Part shown: in pieces, positions 4,312 to 51,768 of the stretch | Layout: every line of letters begins with the position of its first letter | Position numbering within the stretch: position 1 is the first letter of the stretch | Assembly (NCBI GenBank): GCA_002269645.1 | Contig: NIVC01000949.1 | Coordinates: 1 to 64,000, forward strand | DNA length: 64,000 nt | Source: Macrostomum lignano | Taxonomy: Eukaryota | Direction of reading: 5' to 3' | Position numbers and translations under genes: made by a program | The notes under the pieces: model-generated | The model's database searches: none | Seen by the model: the letters and a program-made list of their open reading frames with translations, nothing else | What the model was told of the DNA's origin: nothing

Positions 4312-6489
4312 GCCTGCCTGCCTGTCTGTCTCTGCCTGCCTGCCTGCCTGCCTGTCTGTCTGTCTCTGCCTGCCTGCCTGCCTGCCTGTCTGTATCTGCC
4401 TGCCTGCCTGTCTGTCTGTCTCTGCCTGTCCGTCTGTCTGTCCGTCTGTCTGTCCTAGATTCTGTCCGCCTGTCTTAGCCCCAGCCGCAGGCCGGCACCC
4501 ACCTGAACAATCCCACCCGCCAGTCCCGAGCCTGCACAGCAAAGTATGACGTCATCGGCGCCAGCGGACCCCCGGAGCACCAGGCCGGCGGCTGGCCGTA
4601 GCCGCGCAGGCTGTAGTTGCGCGCCAGGGCGAGCGCCAAGAGGCCCGGCTCCGGCGGCTGCCCCTCCGCGGAGGCAGTCCAGCAGAAGGAGAGGCCCATC
4701 GCCAGCTGGTGCGCCAGGAACCCGGAGCAGGCAGCGGCCGACAGGGCACCGGAGCGGAGCGCCACCTGATTGGTGATGGTGGATTGAATGCATTGCGAGC
4801 TGGGATGCCATGGAGATGGAAAGGTTCGGGTGAACTGGGGAGATTGGGGAATCACAGGGGAATGAGATTGGGGAATCACAGGGGAATGAGATTGGGGAAT
4901 CACAGGGGAATGGGATTGGGGAATCACAGGAGAATGGGATTGGGGAATCACAGAGGAATGGGATTGGGGAATCACAGAGGGAATGAGATTGGGGAATCAC
5001 AGGGGAATGATATTTGGGAATCACAGGGGAATGGGAAGATTGGGAAAAGGGGAATATAAAACACGGAAAAGTGGATGAATTGTTACAAAATGGGAAGGTT
5101 TGTGGGAAGATGAGTCGGTAAACACCCAGAGCAATGCCCTAGCCATACCCCGGTACTCACCATGACGATTTCCTGCCAGCGTCGCCGTCGCCAATTAGTT
5201 GCTATGGCAACGCAGGCCGGGGCGGCAACCAGCAGAGCGTTGGCCAGCCCGTTGGACCGAGCGAGTCCAGCAGCGGCCAGAGCCAGGCCAGCCTCCAGAT
5301 GCTGGCCCCGCCGCAGGCAGGACAGAGCCCACAGGCTGCACAGCAGGTGGGCGGGCTCAGAATAGAAGGCCACAAAGAAGGGAGTGGCAGGTGACACGGA
5401 CAGCAGGGTCAGAGCGGCCAGGCGAAGGCCGGGCCGGCCAGGATAATACAGCTCAGTCAGGTGCCAGAACAGGTGGACGCACAACAGGTGCAAACAAAAA
5501 TTAACGCAATAACAAGCCAACAGAGTGACAGTTGTTTCTGTTGCTAGGCAACCGTATTGTTGGTTGCTAAGCAGTAGGATTAGAGGAAATCTAACGGCCC
5601 GGCAGAGCATGGGGTAGAGTGGAAAGAACACGACAGAATGATCGATGACGTAACCTCGACGGGCGATGAGGACAAAGTGCACGGAGTCCCAGCGGTGGTA
5701 GCCGTCCAGAAGGAGGCGCAGGACCCAGCCGACTGGACTGGGCTCTGGCTGCTGTTCCTCGACCGACTGAGGCTCGTAGTCGGCCAGCTTGAAGGCGCCG
5801 GCATTGTGATCCGGGATGAAGTGGGAGACCGCCTGTGCGGGACGAAACAGAATGGCAGTAGTGTGGGTAAAAGGCAGGAGTAAATGAACTATATTTTGAT
5901 GCGTCACTGCCTCGGCATCTAATTAGCAATTGCTTTAATACAGTAAGAATGTATTTATTTTAGCATCCTAAAAAGATTCTATGTTCTATAATATTCATAA
6001 AGACAAAATTTGACAGGTATGCTTTTTAGCGCTAACTCAGAGGTTGGCAAACTTTTTTATTCAAATGGCAAGATAAATAATCCAGCTAATGGCTGTGGGC
6101 CAGATAAGAGGAGAGGGGAGAGATAAGAGGGAAGAGAGGAGCGGAGAGAAAGGAAAGGTGAGAGAGGAGAGGTAAGAGAAGGGAGATGAGAGAGGAGAGG
6201 GCTGAGAAAGGGGGAGGTGAGGACAGGGGAGAGAGGAGGGGAGAGGTAAGAGAGAAAAGCTGAGAAGAGGCACAAACTCTGAGCAGACCGGACTGCTATT
6301 TTGAAGTTTCAAGGGACCCAAGGGCCAGATAGAGGCTTAGTAGACTAGAGTTTGCCAACCCAAGCTAACTGAAGGCTTAAAAGATATAATTATAATTATA
6401 GTTAGCAAATTTACCTGAATTGCCAAGGATACAAATCGAACAAAAATGATTAAATGAAATTTTCTTGGCACTTTGGAGAGCAATGACAT
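3706..6489 (-). CDS. PIGV: GPI mannosyltransferase 2 (PIG-V/Gpi18), 4 coding exons, 485 aa
   Basis: Minus-strand exons 6489-6415 (MSLLSK...SLAIQ), 5832-5161, 4765-4503 and 4153-3706; phases 0, 0, 2 are consistent. Motifs: IPDH, RWDSVHF, FFPLYP, YSE, RSNG, VGLFSYYEWRQAPNFLLAAP and the C-terminal HANFLPWT typical of PIGV. Confidence 0.95.
4262..4455. repeat. (TGTC)/(TGCC)n microsatellite in PIGV intron 3
   Basis: Seen directly. Confidence 0.95.
4840..5040. repeat. 24-bp minisatellite (TGGGGAATCACAGGGGAATGAGAT) in PIGV intron 2
   Basis: About 8 tandem copies; the 8-aa periodicity appears in the ORF track. Confidence 0.9.
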
Positions 6490-9922: not shown

Positions 9923-11094
9923 CGTTGTACCAGTATCACTACACATATGTACTTAATACGAGTATGAAAATGCACCAAGTTGGTTCTTCTGCCGATTTTT
10001 CAATTTTTCACACTACTTTTTATTGATGCGTCAGTGCCAGCAATCTTCACCATCGCTTGCATGGAAACTAAGCTCATGGTTCCGTTTGTGAACGTTTACT
10101 AAGAATCTTCTTAATTGTGAATTGTTAAACAGCTCAATAAATTATTAATTAAACGATCGAGGATTGTATTTTACACGCAATCTGTTTAAGTTCCATGCGT
10201 ACGTGCTTGGTTTGAAATTTTTTGGCAAGCGATCAAATAGAACTGCTTACAGGCACAGCTGCCTGCAGAGATGTCGAGCGACGTTGAGCCGATCGATAAA
10301 GTAGGAAAAGTTTCTGCTCCATCAAATACGGCCAGTGAAGGTAATAAAAGTTTATTATCAATGATGATTGCAGTTGCGTTAAAATTATAGGCTGTTATTG
10401 CTTCCAACCCGGACAATGTATTTAGAAATCCTTAATGGTAGCCATGCAGTGCAGCCTCCTGTGAAAACGCACGCTGTATCAACAGAATGTTTGATTGTCC
10501 CTCCGTGTATTCGGTTCTGACGAGAGAGAGAAGAGAACGGAGGGGAGAACAGAAGAGGAGAGAGGAGAGGTGAGAGGGGAGGAGAGTGGAGAGGAAAAGA
10601 GCAAGATAGTGCAGGCAGACAAAGGAGGGAAAGGAGTAAGTGGCATATACAATGCAAGGACATATGCAGCAATGCTAAAAATGCATAAAATTGCCAAGGG
10701 TTTGACGACTCCCTTGGGTAAAATGGTTCTTCAAAGACCTACTGTAACTGCATTGCATCTACGCGAGGGACTTAGTCGAGACAGTTTTGGCAGTTACCAA
10801 TTCTTCTGCGCCAAATATTCAGTTCTCATAATTAAACATGCAAAATGTATCTGTACGCTTGCTTTGCTTGTTAAACCAGAGCCTCTGTGCTATGGCACGC
10901 AGCAGGGAGCGAGTGTTGCTATTCGAAAAAAGCAGGGGTATTGTTCCACAATTCGCATGGATACATGCATGAATGTGTGTGTAGTCAAGCAGTTTTGCCA
11001 CAAGCCAGCGAAAGTATATATATATATGATTGTGAATAAGATGAAAGCAGAGACAAACAGACTAAGCTAGTGTTAACTCGAGTGAATCTATAGA

Positions 11095-12352
11095 ATGACG
11101 GAGGCTGCAGAAGCTCCAGAAGATTTCGCCCTTGTTGAAGAGTCCTTAGACTTGCTGAGTGAGACATGACTGCTGCCTTAAATTTAATCATTCGTACAAT
11201 GCGATATTAGAGTTGAATTGCACGTAACTTCTCATTGTTTACTTGTCAATTCCCTCTGACAGAAAAGTGCAGGTCAGTGTTTCAACTGTTCAACCGGGGC
11301 TCGGACAGCATGCTCACCAGAGACCTCGGGTCCGCTCTGCGCGCTCTGGGCCAGATACCCAGCGATCAGGAGGTGGAGATGATCGCCTCAAAGCTGGAGC
11401 AGGATGAAATCTATGACAAAGGTTCGGGCTTATCTTGTTGGCTCTCTGTGTTTTGTTCAGACAGTGTGAAATGAATATTCCCTGGAGAGCTGTAGACACC
11501 TTGACGCAACGATTTTTTTAGGATACACAAAAATCTCCTTTGACGACTTTCATCGTGTTGTACAAGAGAATTGCGAGAGAAAAGACGACATCAGAGAAAT
11601 GGTTCTCGACTCGTTTAAGGTGAGTCTTGATCAGTCAGTCAGTCAGTCAGTCAGTCAGTCAGTCAGTCAGTCAGTCAGTCAGTCAGTCAGTCAGTCAGTC
11701 AGTCAGTCAGTCAGTCAGTCAGTCAGTCAGTCAGTCAGTCAGTCAGTCAGTCAGTCAGTCAGTCAGTCAGTCAGTCAGTCAGTCAGTCAGTCAGTCAGTC
11801 AGTCAGTCAGTCAGTCAGTCAGTCAGTCAGTCAGTCAGTCAGTCAGTCAGTCAGTCAGTCAGTCAGTCAGTCAGTCAGTCAGTCAGTCAGTCAGTCAGTC
11901 AGTCAGTCAGTCAGTCAGTCAGTCAGTCAGTCAGTCAGCCAGTCAGCCAACCAGTCAGTCAGTCAGTCAGTCAGTCAGTCATCCCAACTCCAGGCCATGG
12001 ATCTCAAAGCCAGCGGTCTGGTGGACGCCGCCCAGCTCTCATCGCTGCTCACTGGCTCAGGTGAGGCATTGACTCAAGCGGAGATGAAGGAGCTGCTTCA
12101 GGAAGCTGGAGTTAACAAGGACGGAAAGATTGACTACTCAAGTGAGACGGAATTTCTGAATATAGCTCGTATGCTAAGAAGATGTTTGACTACATTCAAT
12201 CTACTACTCACAAAATACGAATTTCAGGATTCGTTGAGCAGCTGCTGCAGTTTGAAATGGCTCAGACTGCTGCTCCCGCTGCAAAGAAAGAGACGGCAGA
12301 TGAGGCCAAGCCGAAAGAGAACAAGAAGGCCAAGGGCAAGAAGAAAAAATGA
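11095..12352 (+). CDS. Calmodulin/myosin-light-chain-like EF-hand protein with a Lys-rich C-terminal tail, 5 exons, 197 aa
   Basis: Exons 11095-11158, 11263-11421, 11522-11619, 11994-12141 and 12228-12352; phases 1, 1, 0, 1 are consistent. Contains DLGSALRALGQIPS, KISFDDF, GEALTQAEMKELL and KDGKIDY; ends KKAKGKKKK. A possible alternative first exon lies at 10271-10340. Confidence 0.9.
11631..11980. repeat. (TCAG)n microsatellite in EF-hand gene intron 3
   Basis: About 87 near-perfect copies. Confidence 0.98.
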
Positions 12353-12566
12353 ATAACTTGCTTTTTTTGTTTGTTTTCGCTAGCATAAAACTTTTGTATA
12401 TGCAGAGAGAACAATATCTCAGTGTGTATCTCAGTCTGCTGTTCATGACTTTCAAGTCTGTGTTGAGAAAAAATAAAACCTGCCCGACACACTGGTATAA
12501 CAAAGTATTTATTGTACGAGAATACCGATTTTAAACAGCCTTCTAAACAGCAATAAATGATGGCTT

Positions 12567-13300
<734 letters not shown>

Positions 13301-14413
13301 TTGTCAAATCTCTTCAATGCACACAAATGGTGAGTTGTTGTCTCCCAAATACTTTTTGCCCACTTTGGAGTTGATTACCTGGAAATTATCTGAGTATCAC
13401 GGAGGATTTGGTTAGAATCCAGTTTTACCTAAAATACATGTAGTACCACTCAGAGTGTAAATTCCTTATCAAATTTATTTTTAACAGTGAGTCACAGTGA
13501 GAAGAGTCGGAGTCGGCTAGCAGCACAAGTCCCGAGACCGATCCTTAAGAAACGCTGAAAAAAGGTTCTCGTAAGTGTCTGAACAAGCATCCAAGTTGTT
13601 TAATAATAAATGGAGCTCCCTGGTGAGCTCAGGGTGTATGCGACGCAGTGCTGATGAACAAAACAATGACATAGCTACGGGGGGTCCGACGAAGAATCTA
13701 TTATAGAGTTTCATAAGTGTGTAGGCATTAATCCAAACACACACGCTGGCGCTGTATAAACAGACAGAGAGGTTTATGCTAAGCGCTAAGCCTATAACTA
13801 TTATAGCGCGCGGTGAAAGTGGAAGAGATGCCAAGTTTTTAAACCGAAGAATCTGCAGGCAGAGTGAGCGAGCGGGAGAGTGAGTAAGAGAAAATAGAGA
13901 TGCTGGACTTATGGCTCATTTCCGACGTGCCACACCGCCTTTCATTTTACCGGGGGGGGGGGGGAGGCACAATAGCGAGAGAGCGCGGAATCGTCCCCAC
14001 CAAAATGAGCTTGTCACTCAAGCGGTTCAGCCAACACTTTCACTCGGCTCTGGGCTTTTAAGGACGAAAGAGGAGGCTACACGGAGTCGGACTGGGGGAG
14101 GGGGAGAGGCAGAGGGAGACAGACAGACACACGGCGAGCTTACAAGCGACTGCAGCCCGTTAGACAGTTGGGTCGGGCGGCCCGGTTCTATCTGAAGTAT
14201 AAGAGAAGAGAAGAATGCACGACCCCCCCCCCTGCAGCCCCAGTTTTACTGTGGAATAGATAAGAGAGGCCTAAGCTCTGCCAGAATAAAAGAGTAGTTT
14301 CGGGATAGTTGAGGACCTGTCCTAATAGGTCTAAGCCAAAAGCCGCTATAAATGTACCTGTGCAGATCCAGCTGATTAAAAAGGACGTCGAAGAAGCGTT
14401 GAAGAAATTCAGC

Positions 14414-15586
14414 ATGCAGGCAGCAGCAACAACAGCGGCGGCGGATGCACTGCTGATGCTACTCTTTGTGCTGCTAGCAACACGTTCAGCTGGAGTGCAG
14501 CTGCCGCTGAATCAAGCTGACGAAGCTCAAGCAGTTGTGAGGTACGAGAAAGGCGACTGCATCTACGAGACCATCGCCTGTCTGTACGACGACAGCTGCG
14601 GGCCGCTGCTCCGCACGGTGTACGCCTACTGTTACGAGACTGACGGCTATCTCCGAGATCGGCCGGACGGGTCCAGGCTGCAATGCGACTCCTCCTGCTC
14701 GGTGCTCCTGTCGCTGTTATTCAACACTACTGGCGGAGCCCGCCTGACTCAGTGCAACTACAGCGGCAACGAGTTCTGGACTCAGATTGTCATACACAAG
14801 CGGCGAGCCTGCGCCGGCCTGCTGGAGAAAACCGACGCCTTGCTGCGACGCGAGCTGGATGGAGAAATCCGAACTGCTTGCTGGCTGGCTGGGCTGCTGT
14901 GCGCCAAGGACTTCGCCTGCCGGTCGACTCTCACAGCCGTGCTGGACCTGCCGTGCTACGACGGACCCTGCAGCCAGGACTGCGCCGCTCGGCTCAGCAA
15001 CTTTGCTAAAGACTTTGGCCACATTTTCCACACATTCCTGAGCTGCTTGTGCGGCCCGGACCTGGCAGCCGCCTGTCCTCAACCGGTGCCTGGTGATTAC
15101 CTTGGCAACCGAAGCGCCGCACTCGACCAAGTTGCATTTGTATCGCCGCTGGACGGTCTGATGACTCAGCTGGGCAGGGGCGCCATCCGCGAGCACATGC
15201 GAGACATTGTCTGGCTGCTGAAGGTGTTCGAGCATCCGTTCTACTGTCGCAGCATGAAGACAATCATCAGCGAAGCAACCTGCCTGCCGCCGGTGAGCAG
15301 ACAGCCTACAGTCGATGAGCCGCTTTGCACCATTGAGCCGGTGTACGAACTGCCCGAAACGACAACTGTTGCTAACCAGCTCACCACCGATGCCAGTTCT
15401 CAGCAAGCTGTCCCTAGCTCAGATCCAACGACAACTGTTGAGCAACCTTACACTGACAAACCGAAGAGTGCCTCTGTGGACTCAGCGACTCCAGTTGCCA
15501 GCGCCTGCGGCAGATTCCGCACAGACTGGGAAACTGCCAATCTAATCACAGTCAGCGTTTTGATATTTTTGACAACGAAGTTTTAG
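14414..15586 (+). CDS. GAS1/GFRalpha-like cysteine-rich surface protein, probably GPI-anchored; single coding exon, 390 aa
   Basis: ATG at 14414 is in frame with ORF 14309-15586. The protein has a signal peptide (LLMLLFVLLATRSAG), two Cys modules with the C-x6-C-x5-C...C-x3-C...C spacing of GDNF-receptor/GAS1 domains, a Thr/Ser/Pro-rich stalk and a hydrophobic C-terminal tail (LITVSVLIFL). Confidence 0.75.
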   Translation: MQAAATTAAADALLMLLFVLLATRSAGVQLPLNQADEAQAVVRYEKGDCIYETIACLYDDSCGPLLRTVYAYCYETDGYLRDRPDGSRLQCDSSCSVLLSLLFNTTGGARLTQCNYSGNEFWTQIVIHKRRACAGLLEKTDALLRRELDGEIRTACWLAGLLCAKDFACRSTLTAVLDLPCYDGPCSQDCAARLSNFAKDFGHIFHTFLSCLCGPDLAAACPQPVPGDYLGNRSAALDQVAFVSPLDGLMTQLGRGAIREHMRDIVWLLKVFEHPFYCRSMKTIISEATCLPPVSRQPTVDEPLCTIEPVYELPETTTVANQLTTDASSQQAVPSSDPTTTVEQPYTDKPKSASVDSATPVASACGRFRTDWETANLITVSVLIFLTTKF

Positions 15587-16265: not shown

Positions 16266-16907
16266 ATGGGCATCGGCTCGAGCAGCGAAGCCCGAAGCCG
16301 CGTCATCATGATTGGCCTCGACTCGGCTGGCAAGACCACTCTACTGTACAAGCTGAAAAGTGGCGAAGTCAGCACCTCGATTCCCACTATCGGGTTCAAC
16401 GTTGAGACACTGAGCCTCAGTCGGAGCACCCAGCTAGTCAGCTGGGATGTTGGCGGACGCTGTTCGCTGAGACCTCTGTGGCGGCACTACTTCAGAGACG
16501 CCCAAGGCCTGATATTTGTAGTTGACAGCTCCGATAGAGATCGGATGCACGAAGCGGCAGACGAGTTGGCTCGACTACTCGAACACGACGAGCTCGCTGG
16601 CTGCCCGCTGCTGGTGCTGGCCAACAAGAAGGACCTGCCGAGTGCCATGCCGCTGGCTGAGCTGACGGAGAGGCTGCGCGTGCCCTGTCTGCGTCTCAAC
16701 CGGCCATTCCGGATGTTCGCCATCAGTGCAAGTAACTTTGATGGCGTTGCGGGAGCGTTCGACTGGCTGGCCAGAGAGGTGAAACGCCGCCTTCCAGGCT
16801 CCAAGGATGAAGTTCAAGAAGCATTGGGCAGCCATGGCAACGGCAAAATTCTACAGCTGACCGAGAGTCTGCTGCCGAAAGGGCTGCAGAAATTGTTGTT
16901 CTCCTAG
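16266..16907 (+). CDS. Arf/Arl-family small GTPase, intronless, 213 aa
   Basis: N-terminal MG, P-loop [44 protein letters not shown] and a G5 SAS. It has a C-terminal extension of about 35-40 aa. Confidence 0.93.
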
Positions 16908-25949: not shown

Positions 25950-27962
25950 CTCTATTTGCCTCTGGCAGCCGCAGACCCCCCCCCCCCCCACGCCAGGCTC
26001 GCCAGTCCGCAGGCCGTGGTACTGCTCAACATACCCTCTAATGCCTACGGTGTTCGACCGTGCCGATGGGCTGGAAGGCCGGGGAGTAGTCCGGTCGCAA
26101 GCGGTCCCCCTCCTGGTGTCGGGCCAGCCTTGAGGGTTCTATTGGCCTACTGCCCGGTCAGGTGGAGCGACCGGGTGGGTACCGCGCCCCTTCGAGGGTA
26201 GCCCACCAACCTTTATCATGGCCTTCGAGCCGACTATGGATAAACAAACCAAATCTAGGGACGGGGACCCTTCAAAACCCCAACCTCAGTCAGAAGGACC
26301 GGCCGGCCCTGCTGGCAGATCCCAACCGACTGATTCATCTGTGGCAAAAGAAGAACCGGCTGGCTCTGCTGGCAGATCCGACCAGAGCTACAAAAACCAA
26401 AGTACTCAAAGACCTGCCAGCTCTGCTGGTGGATCAAAGGGAACCGCGAGCTCTGAGCCTAAAGGACCGGCCAAATCTGGCAGATCCGACGAAGCTCAGC
26501 GGGCTCGGCTCGAGCGCAAACGCGCTAAACAACGCGCCAAAAGGCAGGCCAAGAAGGGAGCTGCGGGGGCCAAAGCGGCGGCGTCCACCATGGATGCTGA
26601 AGCGACTGGCGTCCCAAAGCAACCAGACGGGCCGGCCGATGGAAGCTCCAGTAGTTCAGCGGCGGCGCTCCCTGGAGATGCTGCTGCGGCAGCTGAGGCC
26701 GAAACCACGGCGCAACAAATGGCCACTGCCAACAAGGAGGTTCCTTCGGGAGCTACCTTTGCGGCGAAGGCCAAGGCCAAAATCCCGGGAGTGATCATTC
26801 AAGGTCGCGACCAGGATTGGACCACTGATCAGCTTCAAAAAGTGTGGAGTGCTGTTGACTCCTATCTGATTGAGCTGACTGTCGAGGAGGGAATCTCCAT
26901 CGGCATTGAGCGGATGGTGCTGCAAAGCACATTCGTTCTTATTGCTTCTACATGTAGCAGTGAGGAGGACGCTCAGCAGCTGCTCCAGCGGCTACCGACG
27001 GTCTCCTTGGATGCTGACCTCGGCGGAGCCCTTTTTCTTCGCGAAGGCCGGCGTCCAAAGACAATACCCTACGTGGTTTTTGTCCCTGCAAAGAGCACCG
27101 CAGCTGGACCAGACGTGATTCGCCGGGTCCTACTGCGTCTGAACCCCGACCTCCCTGCTAGTGGACTGGTGTATCACCGCAATGTCCGCAGGGGGGAGAC
27201 GGGCAAGTCAATTATCCTCGGCCTTTCCAACGCTTGGGCGAGTCGGTACCCTAACGGATCCTTTTTCCAGCTGGGTGCCCTCAAGCTCAAGATGCGCCGA
27301 GGAAAGTCTGCCAAAGGGAAGGCTACTGCCAACCCCGGCATCTCCGGCAAGAGCGGGGCGCAGTCTAAGGCCAGGGAAAGGTGCAAGCCGATCCCAAAGC
27401 CAAAGCTGCATCTCGCCCCTCTGCTAGCAGCAGTTCGGCGACCCCGGTGACAGCTCCGGCCAAGCCCCGGGAACCGAACCTGCCAGCCGGAGAAGGAGTT
27501 GCGGACGAGGCCGGGTCTTCGGAATCCGAGCTCTCCTCGGCCACCATTTTGCATGCAGTCAGTTTCTTTAGACAAATAGACACGGTTCACTGGTGGGGTC
27601 TGAAGGCAAAGATGCAGATGAGGAAGCTTCCTCCATCCTGTCATCGGAGCCTGAGGACTCTGCTGGGGGGGGGGGGGGGCTGGTGGGGGTGAGGAGGCCA
27701 TGGACGTCGACCAACTCCCATCTCCCAGTCAAGCCCCAACGGCCTGGGACGAGGACGATTTGCTGTCCAAGTCTCCTTGATAGCCCGGGGTTCTAGCCAG
27801 CTATTGCATTCAATACAGTATGACTAAGCTCCACGCTGCCAAAGGAGCGAAATTCTGTCTGCAAATAAATTTACAGCATTGCGTATTTGCGTCAGTAAAT
27901 CTGATGAAGATTGCTGAGCTGTACAGGCCAGGCCTCATTCTGATCCAGGAACTCTGGAAAGT
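25950..27962 (+). mobile_element. 5' half of a non-LTR retrotransposon (R1/LOA-like): 5' UTR, frameshifted ORF1, start of ORF2 AP-endonuclease
   Basis: ORF1 runs from 26218 (low-complexity N-terminus, then a DUF4780-like LLRLNPDL...G...LGALKLKM region) and continues by frameshift to ...WDEDDLLSKSP* at about 27780. ORF2 from 27820 has LQINLQHC...NL...LILIQELW, the typical APE N-terminus, and breaks off at about 27960. The 5' boundary is approximate. Confidence 0.8.
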
Positions 27963-30335: not shown

Positions 30336-31006
30336 TGTTTGCTTTTCTTCTTCCTATATTGCTATATAGCATGAGTAGATGAAATGGAAAATAAATTCTG
30401 TCTCTCAGAATAGTAGGGGGACTCAAGAGTTCGCTGGTAGGTCAGCAACAGAAGACGATGCAGCGGAAACGACTGCTCAACACGCGAGCACGAGGCAACC
30501 GGAGCACACACTGGGCCAGCCCCGCCCTCCCAACCCCACACCAACGTGCTCGGGTGCACAAAAGCCTTTTATTGGCCAACTCTAAACACCGACCCTCCCT
30601 GCTCAGCCCGAAAAGCAGTCCTGTGGAGCCATGCGTATGACAGCTAAAAATATTTGCCTTCTCAGCCACAACGCGCTGGCAGGCTGGGGTTGCTGTGATA
30701 GAAGCACAGTGCCAGTGACAGTATCTATATTGTTGAGCTCAGTGCACGCTCGCAAACTGCAGTGTTTCACGTCCTGCGACGACAGCTCCCCCCCCTTCCA
30801 CACCACCAACCCACTGGCGCACGCAGCTATTAATTTTCCATCTGCGCTTCTTTTGTCCATCGCTGTCGGTTCCCCTCCAGAGCGCATCGGAGAAATTCTG
30901 CCACGTCAGCCAGACAGAGCCGTGTTTATATAGCTGACCTCTCTCTATTTTGCCCTATAGAACTACGCTTTCATTGCTAGAGAAATCTCATTTTGAACTG
31001 TAAAGT

Positions 31007-31790
31007 ATGAGACAAGCATTGCTTCTGCTGTTGCTGCCACAGCTGTTGCTTCAGCTGCAATTGCTAAAAGCAGAAGAGACTCCTCAAGGTCACTTGGAAG
31101 AATTCGGCAAGCAGGGGCCGAATCTGGGCATCGACCAGGTGGACGGGTTCATCCCGCCGCAGGAGTTCATCAACGAGTACGTGCGGAAGAACAAGCCGCT
31201 GTTGTTCAAAGGCGCCGCCAAGTTATCCCCAGCGTTCAACAAGTGGACCGACGAGTATCTCAGCTCCATGGTGCCGCCCAGGCCTGCCGGTGACATCTTC
31301 ATTGAGCACAGCAAGAAGGAGAACCGATCGCAGGGCTACAATTTTGTTCATTTCAAAAAGTTTTTAGAGATTTATAACACATCCAATATCTACATGGTGT
31401 CCGATGTGCCCGAGTATCTGCTGTAAGTGTTCTTTAATTCTTGAACTCTTTGACACAGAAATCATCAAGCTCATCGCACGGTTCGGCATGATTAATTGAT
31501 CTTCCAGAAGCGACCTGTTGCTGCCGTTTCCGCTGCAGTGCAGGCTGTTCATCCGCGGAGGCCTGGACACCCACGTTGTGTGGTTCTCTAGCGGCGGGAC
31601 CTCCAGCGTCATCCACCACGATGCCTACGAGAACATCAATTGCCTGTACCGCGGCCGCAAGAAGCTGGTGTTCCTTAATACCACCAAGTACCCTGAGCAG
31701 GCTGAGAAGATCATCGACAGGGAGGAGGGATCATTTTCCTCAGTTGATGTAGACAAGTGAGTGACTAGTTAGTTAGTTAGTTAGTTATTC

Positions 31791-31839
<49 letters not shown>

Positions 31840-31840
31840 A

Positions 31841-31891
<51 letters not shown>

Positions 31892-31892
31892 A

Positions 31893-31931
<39 letters not shown>

Positions 31932-31932
31932 A

Positions 31933-32009
<77 letters not shown>

Positions 32010-33929
32010 GAGTTAGTCAGTCAGTCGGTTAGTCAGTCAATCAGTCAGTTAGTCAGTTTGTCAGTCAGTCAGTCAATCAGTCAGTTAGTCAGTTAGTCAG
32101 TTTGTCAGTCAGTTAGTCAGTCAATCAGTCAGTTAGTCAGTCAATCAGTCAGTTAGTCAGTCAGTCAGTCAGTCAGTCAGTCAGTCAGTCAGTTAGTCAG
32201 TCAATCAGTCAGTCAGTCAGTCAGTCAGTCAGTCAGTCAGTCAGTCAGTCAGTCAGTCAGTCAGTTAGTTTAATCCATCAAACTTCAGAGTCGACGTGAC
32301 TAAACGGCCAGAGTTCAGCGGCCTGGAGTTTCACATCGCCGAGATGGAAACCGGTGACTGCTTGTACATCCCTCTGTTCTGGTGAGTCTCCCTCCCACGC
32401 TAAAGAAAATGCAGTGCATAGAAGATATGCTTGTCAATCTAACTTTGTCACAAATTTCAACACGGGATTCAGGATCCACCAGGTCCGCTCATTCGAGAAC
32501 AATTTGGCCGTTAACATCTGGTGGCCACCCCGAACCGAGTACAAGCTGGGCGAATGCATGCCGCAATACAGCACCAAGCTGAACTTCAACCGCGTCTATT
32601 TCAAGACCATCGAGAATAACATTCGAGGCGACGTTGATAATATCAGGTGAGAAGCCCTGTTCTCTACTGTCTGACAAGCTCTACATACCTGCCTTTATAG
32701 ATAAGACGCTGAGACTAATTGTACGCTTTAACAGACATTGGTTTCACGATTTGGTAGACTGGATACACAATTTGGTAGACTGGATACACAATTTGGTAGA
32801 CTGTGGATACACAATTTGATAGACTGTGGATACACAATTTGATAGACTGTGGATACACAATTTGATAGACTGTGGATACACAATTTGATAGACTGTGGAT
32901 ACACAATTTGATAGACTGTAGATACACAATTTGGTAGACTGTGGATACACAATTTGATAGACTGTGGATACACAATTTGATAGACTGTGGATACACAATT
33001 TGATAGACTGTAGATACACAATTTGGTAGACTGTGGATACACGATTTGGTAGACTGGATACACAATTTGGTAGACAGTGGATACACAATTTGATAGACTG
33101 TGGATACACAATTTGGTAGACTGTGGATACACAATTTGATAGACTGTGGATACACAATTTGGTAGACTGTGGATACACAATTTGATAGACTGTGGATACA
33201 CAATTTGGTAGACTGTGGATACACGATTCGGTAGACTGGATGCACGATTTGGTAGACTGTGGATACACAATTTAGTAGACTGTGTATACACAATTTAGTA
33301 GACTGGATGCACTATTAAAACTCGGTCAATCACAGGCTATTTCCTAACAAAAAATCTGTACATATTGCATCGCAGATTGGTGCTCAAAGCGATCCTACCA
33401 AAAGATGACCGGACCGAGGCTTCACTAATGAAAATTCTGTCCGGTGGCAACGAAGCCCTGGTTGCCAATCCAGAATTCGCATCCGCTGTCAGCTCCATCT
33501 TCAAGGCTCTCGATTTGAACATGGACGGCGAGTTGTCCGACGAGGAGCTGGGCAGAAAGCTGACTCGAAAGGTGAGACCAACCGTCGATAAGTGTTAAAA
33601 TTCACTTAAATCCTCTTCAATTTTTATCACTAATTTTTATGCTTGGCGACCACCAAAAACACGGACAGGATTTCCGGCCAATCTACAAAGCGGTGGCCGC
33701 CTACAATATCATTGTCTACCGGATGCACGAGACGGCCGGAAATGGACCGGAAGCTGATCGGCTGCCGAAATTGTTTCGCACCTCCAACAGCGACGAGAGC
33801 GTGTTCGCGCCGCACCGCACCTGGACGCAGCCGGAGCCGCCGGGCCCGGAGGAAGAGGAGGACGAAATGCCGACTGACGACTGGCAGCCGCCCCAGGCCG
33901 AGCCAGAGAAGTCGAAGGACGAGCTGTGA
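31007..33929 (+). CDS. Secretory-pathway JmjC (cupin) 2OG/Fe(II) oxygenase with an EF-hand and C-terminal KDEL, 6 exons, 462 aa
   Basis: Exons 31007-31422, 31508-31756, 32289-32381, 32473-32646, 33376-33571 and 33669-33929; phases 2, 2, 2, 2, 0 are consistent. Signal peptide MRQALLLLLLPQLLLQLQLLKA; JmjC motifs SVIHHDAYENINC, GDCLYIPLFWIHQVRS and NLAVNIWW; EF loop DLNMDGELSDEE; ends SKDEL*. Confidence 0.92.
31766..32268. repeat. (TTAG)n grading into (TCAG)n microsatellite in JmjC intron 2
   Basis: Seen directly; the switch occurs at about 32015. Confidence 0.97.
32745..33310. repeat. 23-bp minisatellite (TAGACTGTGGATACACAATTTGA/G) in JmjC intron 4
   Basis: About 24 copies. Confidence 0.96.
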
Positions 33930-34194
33930 TTTAGGAAGGCATCGCAAATTCGAACTACAAGCGTACTGGCTCATCCATTCCGTTATCAAATTTTTAGCTC
34001 AGTCTTAACCAATTCAAATTAACTGCTTACTGTCTAACACACGAATTATCGAAGGCAAGCAAAATTATTTGAACCAGATATACGCTGAAGCTGTTATGTA
34101 CTAAATAGAAACTCTTCTGAGAATCAAAGCGATTGTCAATGGCCCAATGAGCCGGTTGGACTTTTGCGTTTACTTAGTAGTTGCATTTGCTACG

Positions 34195-34750
<556 letters not shown>

Positions 34751-35377: not shown

Positions 35378-51768
<16,391 letters not shown>

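What the first reader, a model, noticed from the sequence alone, without database searches (positions are those of the whole stretch)
31007..33929. ER-luminal, apparently active JmjC dioxygenase with an EF-hand and KDEL
Seen: the spliced product has a cleavable signal peptide and a FIH/JMJD5/JMJD7-like JmjC domain. The HxD...H iron triad is intact (IHHD; WIHQV), as is the 2OG-binding Lys (RGRKKL). It also has a canonical EF-hand loop (DLNMDGELSDEE) and ends in KDEL. Established: characterised JmjC hydroxylases act in the cytosol or nucleus, and the ER-luminal vertebrate JMJD8 is generally regarded as catalytically atypical. Inference: this is a Ca2+-sensing ER-resident hydroxylase of secreted proteins with unknown substrate. 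To my knowledge such proteins are uncharacterised, though related invertebrate sequences may exist. It lies tail-to-tail with laminin gamma, but proximity alone is not evidence of a substrate.
Basis: partly seen in the sequence, partly recalled or inferred. Interest (0 to 1): 0.72.

Follow-up and report, generated by a model that had tools for sequence, protein, structure and literature searches.

The report
ER-resident JmjC hydroxylase with EF-hand
This flatworm gene encodes an apparently active iron/2-oxoglutarate hydroxylase that carries a signal peptide, a calcium-binding EF-hand and a KDEL tail, and it belongs to an old, uncharacterised animal family that looks built to hydroxylate proteins inside the endoplasmic reticulum and that vertebrates, insects and nematodes seem to lack.

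Summary
Six GT-AG exons (31007-33929, + strand) give a 462-aa protein. It is identical to the transcript-derived GenBank model BOX15_Mlig029500g1 of the flatworm Macrostomum lignano.

The protein has a Leu-rich N-terminal signal sequence and a Cupin_8/JmjC domain (Pfam E=2e-35; the AlphaFold model matches JMJD5 at 2.6 A). It also has a C-terminal EF-hand pair with one canonical loop, an acidic tail and KDEL.

In 65 orthologs from sponges to amphioxus, these are invariant or nearly so:
- the Fe(II) triad (H175, D177, H255);
- the 2OG contacts (Y129, S172, N181, K190);
- four cysteines;
- the EF-loop ligands and the terminal EL.

Of the 120 best homologs, 96 combine signal, EF loop and xxEL.

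It is not JMJD8. Real JMJD8 sequences score 1.4 bits, have HxH, lack an EF-hand and KDEL, and lie nearer JMJD6. The nearest characterised enzymes are JMJD5, JMJD7 and TYW5 (81-109 bits, against at least 233 within the family). No vertebrate, arthropod or nematode member appeared. I found no paper describing the family, and databases call it TYW5-like or JMJD5-like.

Best reading: an active, Ca2+-binding, ER-retained protein hydroxylase of unknown substrate. 'Ca2+ sensing' is unproven. The laminin adjacency is not conserved.

The parts
31007..31422 (+). Exon 1 (aa 1-139, split codon). It holds the start codon, the signal sequence and the N-terminal part of the Cupin_8 domain, including the family-specific E100-x-x-K103-K104-E105-x-R107 loop and Y129.
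   Evidence: An in-frame stop lies two codons upstream of the ATG. The donor is GTAAGT at 31423.
31007..31072 (+). Predicted signal peptide, aa 1-22 (MRQALLLLLLPQLLLQLQLLKA | EE).
   Evidence: This is the only segment with transmembrane-like hydrophobicity: the 19-residue Kyte-Doolittle mean is 1.75, against at most 1.06 elsewhere. An N-terminal hydrophobic segment is present in 108 of the 120 best homologs although its sequence is not conserved. The cleavage site is my inference; no SignalP was available.
31160..32533 (+). Cupin_8 / JmjC catalytic domain, aa 52-273. It spans exons 1-4, so the range includes introns 1-3.
   Evidence: Pfam PF13621, E=2.2e-35. AlphaFold model with pLDDT 87.8 and pTM 0.81. 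Foldseek matches to TYW5, JMJD5 (TM 0.83, rmsd 2.6 A), JMJD7 and FIH.
31508..31756 (+). Exon 2 (aa 139-222). It holds W164, S172, the HxD motif, N181, C184 and K190.
31614..31622 (+). Codons H175-H176-D177, the HxD Fe(II) ligands.
   Evidence: They align to JMJD5 H321/D323. H175 and D177 are invariant in 65 of 65 orthologs.
31659..31661 (+). Codon K190, the lysine that binds the 2-oxoglutarate C5 carboxylate.
   Evidence: It aligns to JMJD5 K336 (role from PMC5862942). Invariant in 65 of 65.
32289..32381 (+). Exon 3 (aa 222-253). It holds G244-D245-C246 and the strand before the distal His.
32473..32646 (+). Exon 4 (aa 253-311). It holds the distal His, the end of the double-stranded beta-helix (N263, N267, W269), C281 and the start of the EF-hand domain.
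32477..32479 (+). Codon H255, the distal Fe(II) ligand.
   Evidence: It aligns to JMJD5 H400. Invariant in 65 of 65.
32603..33737 (+). C-terminal EF-hand pair domain, aa about 297-399, spanning exons 4-6. It consists of a degenerate first EF-hand (loop about 318-324) and a canonical second one.
   Evidence: A profile of this domain alone hits EF-hand proteins in the PDB: EhCaBP1 at 8.9e-15, neurocalcin at 7e-12, and calmodulin at 2e-9 over 77 positions. The full-length model shows helix-loop-helix twice, with single bridge residues at 324 and 363. Foldseek on the isolated domain was not significant.
33376..33571 (+). Exon 5 (aa 311-376).
33512..33547 (+). Canonical 12-residue EF-hand loop, D357-L-N-M-D-G-E-L-S-D-E-E368.
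   Evidence: In all 65 orthologs, position 1 is D, position 3 is D/N, position 5 is D/N/S and position 12 is E/D. Position 6 is G in 43 of 65, and position 8 is hydrophobic in 64 of 65. Pfam EF-hand_5 E=3.8e-5.
33669..33929 (+). Exon 6 (aa 377-462 plus stop). It holds the last helix, the acidic tail and KDEL.
33738..33914 (+). Acidic, predicted-disordered tail, aa 400-458.
   Evidence: pLDDT is below 50 for aa 417-432, 438-442 and 451-462. The last 63 residues (aa 400-462) are 27% D+E, against 15% for the whole protein. The family median after the EF loop is 28%.
33915..33929 (+). K459-D-E-L462 ER-retrieval signal and the TGA stop.
   Evidence: E461 and L462 are invariant in the 65-sequence alignment. 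Of the 120 best homologs, 96 end in [KRHQSA][DENQ]EL and 112 end in xxEL.

Best explanation
The gene encodes a soluble protein of the endoplasmic-reticulum lumen that is a catalytically competent Fe(II)/2-oxoglutarate-dependent JmjC hydroxylase. It is one member of an ancient animal family.

Proposed mechanism:
1. The N-terminal signal sequence takes the protein into the ER. The C-terminal KDEL returns it from the Golgi through the KDEL receptor.
2. The JmjC double-stranded beta-helix binds Fe(II) through H175, D177 and H255.
3. It binds 2-oxoglutarate through Y129, S172, N181 and K190.
4. It uses O2 to hydroxylate a side chain of a client protein that passes through the secretory pathway.
5. 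A flexible, family-specific loop (E100-x-x-K103-K104-E105-x-R107) sits where JMJD5 holds its substrate arginine. It probably defines a different and conserved substrate.
6. The C-terminal EF-hand pair binds one Ca2+ in its canonical second loop. It either stabilises the enzyme or couples its activity to luminal Ca2+, as proposed for the unrelated ER oxygenase P4H-TM.

Shown here: the gene model, the domain architecture, the conservation of every cofactor ligand, the retention signal and the EF loop, and the distinctness from JMJD8 and from JMJD5, JMJD7, TYW5 and FIH.

Inferred: ER localisation, catalysis, Ca2+ binding, disulfides, and a protein (rather than other) substrate.
For: Gene model:
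- The exon chain is identical to the transcript-based GenBank model.
- The two genomic copies differ by 8 substitutions, all synonymous.

Catalytic domain:
- Cupin_8 E=2e-35.
- Confident AlphaFold model, pLDDT 87.8, superposing on JMJD5 with TM 0.83 and rmsd 2.6 A.
- H175, D177, H255, K190, Y129, S172, W164 and V257 are invariant, and N181 is present in 63 of 65 orthologs.
- These align to JMJD5 H321, D323, H400, K336, Y272, S318, W310, V402 and N327, whose roles are defined crystallographically in PMC5862942.

ER residence:
- N-terminal hydrophobic segment in 108 of 120 homologs, xxEL terminus in 112 of 120, and all three features together in 96 of 120.
- No other transmembrane-like segment.
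- Four invariant cysteines. C184 and C246 align to V330 and an Ile in JMJD5, and C281 lies beyond the JMJD5 C-terminus. C150 aligns to a Cys in JMJD5.
- Acidic tail before KDEL.

EF-hand:
- The loop ligands are conserved in 65 of 65.
- The domain profile hits EF-hand proteins at up to 9e-15.

Precedent: ER-luminal 2OG oxygenases with an EF domain exist. P4H-TM has a Ca2+ affinity in the ER range (PMC7948501).
Against: - There is no experimental datum for any member. Localisation, Ca2+ binding, 2OG turnover and substrate are all untested.
- No signal-peptide predictor was available, so I used hydrophobicity only.
- The window protein's EF-hand Pfam score (23.4 bits) is below the gathering cut-off (25.9). 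Only about 10 of 65 orthologs reach E<=0.001 for an EF-hand Pfam model individually.
- Foldseek on the isolated C-terminal domain gave no significant hit (best E=0.36).
- I could not read model coordinates, so disulfide geometry and the position of the EF domain relative to the active site are unverified.
- About 20% of homologs have non-canonical tails (KVEL, HQEL, KTEL and others) whose retrieval efficiency is unknown.
Confidence: 0.7

Rival explanations
1. It is the invertebrate ortholog of vertebrate JMJD8. On this reading it is an ER-luminal JmjC protein of doubtful catalytic activity that acts as a scaffold in protein folding or signalling.
For: JMJD8 is the only JmjC protein shown experimentally to be ER-luminal and dependent on a signal peptide (PMC5684140). 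Both are JmjC/Cupin_8 proteins with N-terminal signal sequences.
Against: - Against 120 genuine JMJD8 sequences, the best phmmer score is 1.4 bits at E=0.68 with filters off.
- The profile-profile comparison gives probability 24% and 16% identity.
- The JMJD8 profile is closest to JMJD6 in the PDB (2.7e-15). This family is closest to JMJD5 (2.8e-30).
- JMJD8 has HWH rather than HxD, ends in STFLG, and has no EF loop and no xxEL tail in any of 120 sequences.
- None of roughly 100 source-named family members is named after JMJD8.
Confidence: 0.03
2. It is what the databases call it: a cytosolic or nuclear JMJD5/KDM8-, JMJD7- or TYW5-like enzyme (histone demethylase, Arg/Lys hydroxylase of translation factors, or tRNA wybutosine hydroxylase). 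The N-terminal hydrophobic stretch and the KDEL would then be incidental.
For: The best solved relatives are JMJD5, TYW5 and JMJD7. Source names include 'tRNA wybutosine-synthesizing protein 5-like', 'JMJD5-like', 'JMJD7-like' and 'lysine-specific demethylase 8'. A 2025 annelid survey lists 'kdm8-like' clades among histone demethylases (PMC12153100).
Against: - The signal sequence, EF loop and xxEL terminus co-occur in 96 of 120 homologs across at least 12 phyla. That is not incidental.
- The family profile scores 81-109 bits against these enzymes, against at least 233 bits for the 150 best family representatives.
- By profile alignment, JMJD5's substrate-arginine residue Y243 is an invariant Lys (K103) here, and the E238 column is variable.
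- The source names disagree with one another for orthologous proteins, as expected for names transferred automatically by similarity.
- Annelids have separate single kdm8 and jmjd7 orthologs in addition to the 'kdm8-like' clades.
- No tRNA or chromatin is expected in the ER lumen (established knowledge).
Confidence: 0.07
3. It is a catalytically silent ER-resident Ca2+-binding or chaperone-like protein that keeps a JmjC fold as a binding module (a pseudoenzyme or 2OG/O2 sensor without turnover).
For: The acidic tail, EF-hand and KDEL resemble ER Ca2+-buffering and chaperone proteins (the comparison with the CREC family and calreticulin is from my own knowledge). JMJD8 shows that an ER JmjC protein can be studied mainly as an interaction partner (PMC5684140).
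Against: Pseudoenzymes usually lose cofactor ligands. Here all three Fe ligands and all four polar 2OG contacts are invariant or nearly so over more than 600 million years of divergence (the time depth is from my own knowledge). So is the hydrophobic 2OG cradle (W164, V257).
Confidence: 0.12
4. It is an active hydroxylase that is mostly secreted or acts in a post-ER compartment (for example in gland secretions), with the KDEL-like tail giving only transient retention.
For: Many homologs carry weaker variants (KVEL, HQEL, KTEL, KGEL, xDEF). The family is expanded in animals with elaborate secretions, with several paralogs in limpets, starfish and amphioxus.
Against: The window protein and its M. 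lignano paralog have the canonical KDEL. Of 120 homologs, 96 match the classical [KRHQSA][DENQ]EL pattern. Fe(II), 2OG and ascorbate supply is established for the ER lumen but not for the extracellular space (established knowledge of collagen hydroxylases).
Confidence: 0.08

Closest known systems
JMJD5 (KDM8), human arginyl C-3 hydroxylase
   Same: It is the best sequence and structure match. The family profile scores 109 bits at E=2.8e-30 over the whole JmjC domain, and Foldseek gives TM 0.83 and rmsd 2.6 A. The cofactor set is the same, including the third polar 2OG contact S318 (= S172) that PMC5862942 calls distinctive for JMJD5.
   Different: JMJD5 has no signal peptide, EF-hand or KDEL, and acts on cytosolic and nuclear proteins. 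Its substrate-arginine residue Y243 aligns to an invariant Lys here, and the E238 column is variable. L329 of the 2OG cradle aligns to N183. The score gap to true family members exceeds 120 bits.
JMJD7 (lysyl C-3 hydroxylase), TYW5 (tRNA hydroxywybutosine synthase), FIH (asparaginyl hydroxylase)
   Same: They belong to the same JmjC-only hydroxylase subgroup. The scores are 87, 81 and 61 bits, and the Foldseek E-values are 1e-16 to 1e-18. Like them, this protein has helices C-terminal to the beta-helix.
   Different: In those enzymes the C-terminal helices serve dimerisation (my own knowledge). Here they form an EF-hand pair. All three are cytosolic or nuclear.
JMJD8, the vertebrate ER-luminal JmjC protein
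   Same: It works in the same place: a JmjC domain behind a signal peptide, shown to be luminal and N-glycosylated (PMC5684140).
   Different: It is not related beyond the fold: 1.4 bits and hhalign probability 24%. JMJD8 has HxH in place of HxD, is about 265 aa, has no EF-hand or KDEL, and is nearest to JMJD6. ER residence therefore arose twice among JmjC proteins.
P4H-TM, the ER transmembrane prolyl 4-hydroxylase with an EF domain
   Same: It has the same functional design: a 2OG oxygenase facing the ER lumen combined with EF-hand Ca2+ binding. Its Ca2+ affinity lies in the ER range, and its authors propose that Ca2+ is relevant to catalysis (PMC7948501).
   Different: It belongs to a different oxygenase family (prolyl 4-hydroxylase type, not JmjC). 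Its EF domain is inserted within the catalytic domain and has two Ca2+ motifs. It is held in the ER by a transmembrane anchor rather than KDEL. It is present in vertebrates.
S100-type and other EF-hand pairs with one degenerate site
   Same: A degenerate first EF-hand is paired with a canonical second one. S100, calmodulin and NCS proteins dominate the (non-significant) Foldseek list for the isolated domain and the significant HMM hits.
   Different: Here the pair is a C-terminal appendage of an enzyme. The first loop is shortened and lacks the acidic ligands.

Membership tests
JmjC / Cupin_8 Fe(II)- and 2OG-dependent oxygenases (JmjC-only hydroxylase subgroup) | Match to the Cupin_8 model above the curated threshold | tested here: met
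   PF13621 at 123.2 bits against a cut-off of 27.4, E=2.2e-35, aa 52-273. All 65 aligned orthologs match.
JmjC / Cupin_8 Fe(II)- and 2OG-dependent oxygenases (JmjC-only hydroxylase subgroup) | HxD/E...H facial triad for Fe(II) | tested here: met
   H175, D177 and H255 align to JMJD5 H321, D323 and H400. They are invariant in 65 of 65.
JmjC / Cupin_8 Fe(II)- and 2OG-dependent oxygenases (JmjC-only hydroxylase subgroup) | Lys (beta-IV) and Tyr that bind the 2OG C5 carboxylate, and Asn that binds the C1 carboxylate | tested here: met
   K190, Y129 and N181 correspond to JMJD5 K336, Y272 and N327. They are conserved in 65, 65 and 63 of 65.
JmjC / Cupin_8 Fe(II)- and 2OG-dependent oxygenases (JmjC-only hydroxylase subgroup) | Double-stranded beta-helix fold | tested here: met
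   AlphaFold pLDDT 87.8. Foldseek probability 1.00 to TYW5, JMJD5, JMJD7 and FIH.
JmjC / Cupin_8 Fe(II)- and 2OG-dependent oxygenases (JmjC-only hydroxylase subgroup) | 2OG-dependent hydroxylation activity | not testable with these tools
   This needs purified protein and a 2OG-turnover or mass-spectrometry assay.
JMJD5 orthologs (arginyl C-3 hydroxylase) | Orthology-level similarity to JMJD5 | tested here: not met
   The score is 109 bits against human JMJD5, while the 150 best family representatives score at least 233 bits. Pairwise identity is about 23%.
JMJD5 orthologs (arginyl C-3 hydroxylase) | Substrate-arginine pocket E238 / Y243 | tested here: not met
   By profile alignment Y243 corresponds to the invariant K103, and E238 corresponds to a variable column (F/S/T/D). 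An invariant E100 lies two residues further on, so an analogous acidic contact is not excluded.
JMJD8 | Detectable sequence relationship to JMJD8 | tested here: not met
   The best score against 120 JMJD8 sequences is 1.4 bits. hhalign gives probability 23.7%.
JMJD8 | HxH in place of HxD at the metal site | tested here: not met
   The window protein has H175-H-D177. JMJD8 has H-W-H.
EF-hand Ca2+-binding domains | 12-residue loop with oxygen ligands at positions 1, 3, 5 and 12, Gly at 6 and a hydrophobic residue at 8 | tested here: met
   The loop is D357-L-N359-M-D361-G362-E-L364-S-D-E-E368. Positions 1, 3, 5 and 12 are conserved in 65 of 65.
EF-hand Ca2+-binding domains | Match to a curated EF-hand model above threshold | tested here: inconclusive
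   The window protein scores 23.4 bits on EF-hand_5 against a cut-off of 25.9, and 8-10 of 65 orthologs reach E<=0.001 per model. A profile of the domain does hit solved EF-hand proteins at 8.9e-15.
EF-hand Ca2+-binding domains | Paired helix-loop-helix units | tested here: inconclusive
   The model shows two helix-loop-helix units with bridge residues at 324 and 363. The calmodulin match spans 77 positions. The second half of the first loop keeps the [ILV]-[TSD]-[FLY]-[ED]-x-F pattern. Foldseek on the isolated domain was not significant.
EF-hand Ca2+-binding domains | Measured Ca2+ binding | not testable with these tools
   This needs calorimetry, thermal shift or 45Ca overlay.
Soluble ER-resident proteins retrieved by the KDEL receptor | C-terminal [KRHQSA]-[DENQ]-E-L | tested here: met
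   KDEL lies at aa 459-462 directly before the stop. The pattern is present in 96 of 120 homologs, and E461 and L462 are invariant in the alignment.
Soluble ER-resident proteins retrieved by the KDEL receptor | Cleavable N-terminal signal peptide and no membrane anchor | tested here: inconclusive
   A Leu-rich 17-residue hydrophobic core follows M-R-Q and is followed by K-A|E-E. There is no other hydrophobic segment, and the feature is conserved in 108 of 120 homologs. No dedicated predictor was run.
Soluble ER-resident proteins retrieved by the KDEL receptor | Observed ER localisation | not testable with these tools
   This needs imaging or fractionation.

The most novel reading that the evidence does not exclude
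This family is the unassigned enzyme that installs a hydroxylated residue on secreted proteins of marine invertebrates. One example is the hydroxyarginine of mussel adhesive plaque proteins, for which the papers I read name no hydroxylase. Its activity would be gated by luminal Ca2+ through the EF-hand. It would be a second, independent invention of an ER JmjC enzyme, dating from the animal ancestor and later lost in vertebrates and ecdysozoans.
Probability: 0.12. Interest if true: 0.85.

Novelty: new variant of a known kind. Interest (0 to 1): 0.62.

Why it matters
All characterised JmjC hydroxylases act in the cytosol or nucleus. JMJD8, the one JmjC protein known in the ER, has an altered metal site and disputed activity. 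This family would show that a fully equipped JmjC hydroxylase has worked in the secretory pathway since early animal evolution.

It seems to be missing from vertebrates, arthropods and nematodes. These are the standard model animals, which may explain why it has gone unnoticed and why it is annotated under misleading names (TYW5-like, JMJD5-like, KDM8).

It gives a concrete candidate for orphan hydroxylations in invertebrate secreted, adhesive, matrix or venom proteins. It is also a second natural example, after P4H-TM, of coupling a 2OG oxygenase to ER calcium.

Macrostomum lignano has RNAi and transgenesis, so the idea can be tested directly.

It also warns that 'kdm8-like' genes counted as histone demethylases in invertebrate chromatin surveys may not be chromatin enzymes.

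Tried and rejected
1. JMJD8 orthology. No JMJD8 appeared among the hits. I therefore rebuilt a query from five human JMJD8 peptides printed in Supplementary Table S1 of PMC5684140 and retrieved 120 real JMJD8 sequences. phmmer and hhalign then rejected orthology.

2. Laminin as a clue. The adjacency exists in both M. lignano copies. It is absent in Lingula, Capitella, a scallop, a starfish and a sea anemone. Rejected.

3. Structure search with the isolated C-terminal domain. No hit was significant (best E=0.36), although the list is full of EF-hand proteins. I rely on HMM evidence instead.

4. Taxonomy of the more distant representatives through cluster look-up. Most come from unnamed metagenome or transcriptome assemblies, so I cannot say whether the family extends beyond animals.

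5. Literature.
   - 'JmjC + KDEL + EF-hand' found 0 papers.
   - 'JmjC + KDEL' found 4 irrelevant papers.
   - 'wybutosine-synthesizing protein 5 + signal peptide' found 1 irrelevant paper.
   - The 2008 JmjC-only evolutionary survey does not mention signal peptide, EF-hand or JMJD8.
   - I could not confirm from the supplements that the annelid 'kdm8-like' clades are this family. C. teleta is reported to have two genes in the kdm8-like 1 clade, and the top hits include two C. teleta proteins, which is suggestive.

6. Disulfide check. Model coordinates cannot be read with these tools, so the pairing of the four invariant cysteines is untested.

7. A full phylogeny against JMJD5, JMJD7, TYW5, FIH and HSPBAP1. 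Sequences of these were available only as search targets, so I compared bit scores instead.

Full report
1. What is in the sequence

Reading 30500-34500 and joining the reading frames gives six + strand exons. They are 31007-31422, 31508-31756, 32289-32381, 32473-32646, 33376-33571 and 33669-33929. All five introns are GT-AG. The CDS is 1389 nt and encodes 462 aa. The ATG at 31007 is preceded, two codons upstream, by an in-frame TAA.

Introns 2 and 4 are filled with microsatellite and minisatellite repeats.

The translation is 100% identical over its full length to the NCBI protein 'hypothetical protein BOX15_Mlig029500g1 [Macrostomum lignano]'. The window is an exact piece of contig NIVC01000949.1 of assembly GCA_002269645.1. 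The GenBank annotation of that assembly was derived from a genome-guided RNA-seq transcriptome (PMC5730564). The exon chain, including the first and last exons, is therefore transcript-based and not only my reconstruction.

A second copy lies on NIVC01000723.1. The sequenced DV1 line carries duplicated chromosomes. That copy encodes the identical protein although its CDS differs at 8 positions, all synonymous, and its introns differ in repeat length. If changes fell at random, roughly a quarter would be synonymous, so 8 of 8 is very unlikely without selection on this frame. That fraction is my estimate.

All of them are there:
- MRQALLLLLLPQLLLQLQLLKA|EE at the N-terminus;
- I174-H175-H176-D177;
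- R187-G-R-K190-K-L;
- W253-I-H255-Q-V;
- D357-LNMDGELSDE-E368;
- KDEL at 459-462, directly before the stop.

Pfam gives Cupin_8 over aa 52-273 (E=2.2e-35, 123 bits) and EF-hand_5 over aa 352-371 (E=3.8e-5, 23.4 bits, just under the 25.9-bit cut-off).

The only segment with membrane-like hydrophobicity is the N-terminus.

3. Catalytic competence

Against solved structures, the protein alone matches JMJD5 (1.7e-13), TYW5 (5e-13), JMJD7 (1.6e-11) and FIH (2e-6).

An AlphaFold model built with 65 orthologs is confident (pLDDT 87.8, pTM 0.81). It superposes on JMJD5 with TM 0.83 and rmsd 2.6 A, and also on TYW5, JMJD7 and FIH.

The JMJD5 crystal structures define the roles of its residues (PMC5862942):
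- H321, D323 and H400 bind the metal;
- N327 binds the 2OG C1 carboxylate;
- K336, Y272 and S318 bind the C5 carboxylate, S318 being distinctive for JMJD5;
- W310 and V402 cradle the methylenes.

The alignments pair these with H175, D177, H255, N181, K190, Y129, S172, W164 and V257. In the 65-sequence alignment all of them are invariant, except N181 at 63 of 65. A pseudoenzyme would not be expected to keep the whole set from sponges to amphioxus.

The region where JMJD5 holds its substrate arginine (E238, Y243 on the beta3-beta4 loop) is different here but just as conserved. It reads E100-x-x-K103-K104-E105-x-R107, with Y243 aligned to the invariant K103. It falls in the least confident stretch of the catalytic domain (mean pLDDT 66 for aa 101-110), as expected for a mobile substrate loop. 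I read this as a conserved substrate that differs from JMJD5's. This is inference.

4. Evidence for the ER lumen

I inspected the 120 best homologs of the window protein for three features:
- 108 have an N-terminal hydrophobic segment whose sequence is not conserved;
- 112 end in xxEL, and 96 of these match the classical [KRHQSA][DENQ]EL pattern;
- 110 have an EF loop in the C-terminal half;
- 96 have all three features.

E461 and L462 are invariant in the alignment.

Four cysteines (C150, C184, C246, C281) are invariant. In JMJD5, C184 and C246 correspond to V330 and an Ile of the GEILFIP strand, C281 lies beyond the JMJD5 C-terminus, and C150 aligns to a Cys. C184 and C246 sit on strands that are neighbours in a double-stranded beta-helix, so disulfides are plausible. 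I could not read the coordinates to check.

The tail between the EF domain and KDEL is acidic: 27% D+E here and a family median of 28%. It is predicted to be disordered. Such a tail is common in ER-resident Ca2+-binding proteins (my own knowledge).

A motif P-G-H-[LM]-x-P-[FL]-G is conserved just after the signal sequence. Its role is unknown.

No signal-peptide predictor was available, so cleavage at A22|E23 is my inference.

5. The EF-hand

In the 12-residue loop, all 65 sequences have D at position 1, D/N at position 3, D/N/S at position 5 and E/D at position 12. Position 6 is G in 43 of 65, position 8 is hydrophobic in 64 of 65, and position 9 is mostly T/S/D/N/E.

Upstream lies a shorter loop that keeps only the exit half of an EF loop ([ILV]-[TSD]-[FLY]-[ED]-x-F). 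In the model the two loops each contribute one bridge residue, at 324 and 363, as in paired EF-hands.

A profile of aa 286-402 alone hits solved EF-hand proteins: Entamoeba CaBP1 at 8.9e-15, neurocalcin at 7e-12, and calmodulin at about 2e-9 over 77 positions.

Foldseek with the isolated-domain model (pLDDT 84.9) gave no significant match, although S100, calmodulin and NCS proteins fill the list.

So there is one canonical Ca2+ site in a pair whose partner is degenerate. Whether it senses Ca2+ or is simply occupied at ER Ca2+ levels cannot be decided here. The ER oxygenase P4H-TM has an EF domain whose affinity lies in the ER range, and its authors consider it relevant to catalysis (PMC7948501). 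That makes a regulatory role reasonable.

6. It is not JMJD8

No hit was named JMJD8. I therefore took five human JMJD8 peptides from Supplementary Table S1 of PMC5684140, spaced them with X, and retrieved 120 JMJD8 proteins from mammals, birds, reptiles, amphibians and a skate.

These proteins are about 265 aa. They have H-W-H at the metal site, end in STFLG, and have no EF loop and no xxEL terminus. This matches the paper's statement that a His replaces the Asp.

With all filters off, phmmer gives at most 1.4 bits between the window protein and any JMJD8. The profile-profile comparison gives 24% probability. The JMJD8 profile is nearest to JMJD6 among solved structures (2.7e-15), whereas this family is nearest to JMJD5 (2.8e-30).

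ER residence therefore arose independently in two branches of the JmjC superfamily.

7. It is not an ortholog of a characterised enzyme

The family profile scores 109 bits against JMJD5, 87 against JMJD7, 81 against TYW5 and 61 against FIH.

In a library of 1.84 billion 50%-identity representatives, 529 proteins score E<=1e-30, and the 150th still scores 233 bits. Most of these again have a signal sequence and a DEL/EEL terminus.

Source names for orthologous proteins disagree with one another (TYW5-like, JMJD5-like, JMJD7-like, KDM8, Dictyostelium jcdA/C-like). This is what automatic transfer of names by similarity produces.

8. Distribution

Named members come from these groups:
- sponges, placozoans and cnidarians (anthozoans, hydrozoans, scyphozoans);
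- flatworm, nemertean, annelids, molluscs (five classes), brachiopod and bryozoan;
- all five echinoderm classes and hemichordates;
- amphioxus and tunicates.

Searches from the flatworm protein and from an amphioxus protein both list 120 hits, down to E=4e-56 and 4e-63. Neither list contains a vertebrate, arthropod or nematode, although these groups dominate the databases.

I conclude that the family dates to the animal ancestor and was lost, or changed beyond this level of similarity, in vertebrates and ecdysozoans. This rests on capped lists and is not proof of absence. Whether the unnamed, more distant representatives include non-animals is open.

M. lignano has a second paralog group (56% identity) with the same architecture.

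9. Neighbourhood

The gene lies tail-to-tail with a 1685-aa laminin (Laminin_N, EGF_laminin, Laminin_B and a long helical tail, so gamma-like) in both M. lignano copies.

In Lingula, Capitella and the scallop Ylistrum, the ortholog instead lies head-to-head with an hnRNP-Q/SYNCRIP-like gene. In the first two a CUB-domain gene follows. A starfish and a sea anemone show neither arrangement.

Laminin is thus no clue to the substrate. The lophotrochozoan microsynteny supports orthology.

10. Literature

I found no paper that combines JmjC with KDEL and EF-hand, and none that describes an ER JmjC hydroxylase other than JMJD8.

A 2025 survey of annelid chromatin genes reports two 'kdm8-like' clades that are closer to jmjd7. 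One of these, kdm8-like 1, has two genes in C. teleta (PMC12153100). My hits include exactly two C. teleta proteins. These clades are probably this family, counted there among histone demethylases, but I could not confirm it from the supplements.

Hydroxyarginine is reported in mussel adhesive proteins and dihydroxyarginine in a sponge peptide. No hydroxylase is named in the papers I read. That is the basis of the speculative novel case.

11. Verdict

'Ca2+-sensing' and 'substrate is a secreted protein' remain inference.

The protein is a new variant of a known kind: a JmjC hydroxylase of the FIH/JMJD5/JMJD7/TYW5 subgroup that has been re-housed in the ER lumen and fused to an EF-hand pair. 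It forms a large and old family that is, as far as I could find, uncharacterised.

Noticed in passing
window 35378-50600 (- strand): A large multi-exon laminin gene lies tail-to-tail with the JmjC gene. The annotated product is 1685 aa, with Laminin_N, many EGF_laminin repeats, Laminin_B and a coiled-coil tail, so it is gamma-like. Several of its introns are filled with long tandem repeats that create spurious ORFs of 300-630 aa (for example 40817-46340).
   Followed up: partly
L004 (Lingula), L005 (Capitella), L006 (Ylistrum): upstream of the ortholog at 10001: Microsynteny is conserved across three lophotrochozoan phyla. The ortholog lies head-to-head with an hnRNP-Q/SYNCRIP-like gene (hnRNP_Q_AcD plus RRMs). 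In Lingula and Capitella a CUB-domain gene lies downstream. This arrangement is absent in M. lignano, Acanthaster and Exaiptasia.
   Followed up: partly
L001 8001-11785 versus window 31007-33929: A second genomic copy on NIVC01000723.1 encodes the identical protein with 8 synonymous differences. Its gene is 862 nt longer, and the extra length lies in introns 2 and 4, which are full of microsatellite and minisatellite repeats in the window. This is consistent with the duplicated chromosomes of the DV1 line.
   Followed up: yes
window 31757-32288 and 32647-33375: Intron 2 is almost entirely (TTAG)n that grades into (CAGT)n. Intron 4 holds about 20 copies of a roughly 23-nt unit (GATACACAATTTGATAGACTGTG-like).
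   Followed up: no
window 34190-34700, 12262-13330 and 11600-12000: Long (GACA)n/(CAGA)n and (CAGT)n microsatellite tracts produce ORFs of 150-350 aa on both strands. These are not genes.
   Followed up: no
window 16266-16907 (+): An intact single-exon ORF of 213 aa is a strong Arf/Arl-family small GTPase (Pfam Arf E=3e-56).
   Followed up: partly
window 5083-5907 (-): An ORF matches the PIG-V GPI mannosyltransferase family (Mannosyl_trans2, E=8e-16, covering profile positions 42-210 of 443). It is probably one exon of a larger gene.
   Followed up: no
window 14309-15586 (+) and 26218-27450 (+): Two long ORFs (425 and 410 aa) have no Pfam match. The first is Cys-rich with a hydrophobic N-terminal segment and a hydrophobic C-terminus. 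The second is basic, Ala/Ser/Pro-rich and of low complexity.
   Followed up: no
window 11997-12356 (+): A short ORF contains an EF-hand-like stretch (LQEAGVNKDGKIDY). It is possibly an exon of a calmodulin-like gene next to a (CAGT)n tract.
   Followed up: no
L003 13919-18076 (M. lignano paralog locus): The paralog Mlig014381 (56% identical, same architecture) lies tail-to-tail with an ankyrin-repeat protein gene. Ankyrin repeats are the classic FIH substrate, but such proteins are cytosolic, so I treat this as coincidence.
   Followed up: no
protein aa 27-34 (window 31085-31108): The motif P-G-H-[LM]-x-P-[FL]-G, directly after the predicted signal-peptide cleavage site, is conserved in about 90% of orthologs (QGHLEEFG in the window protein). 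Its function is unknown.
   Followed up: no
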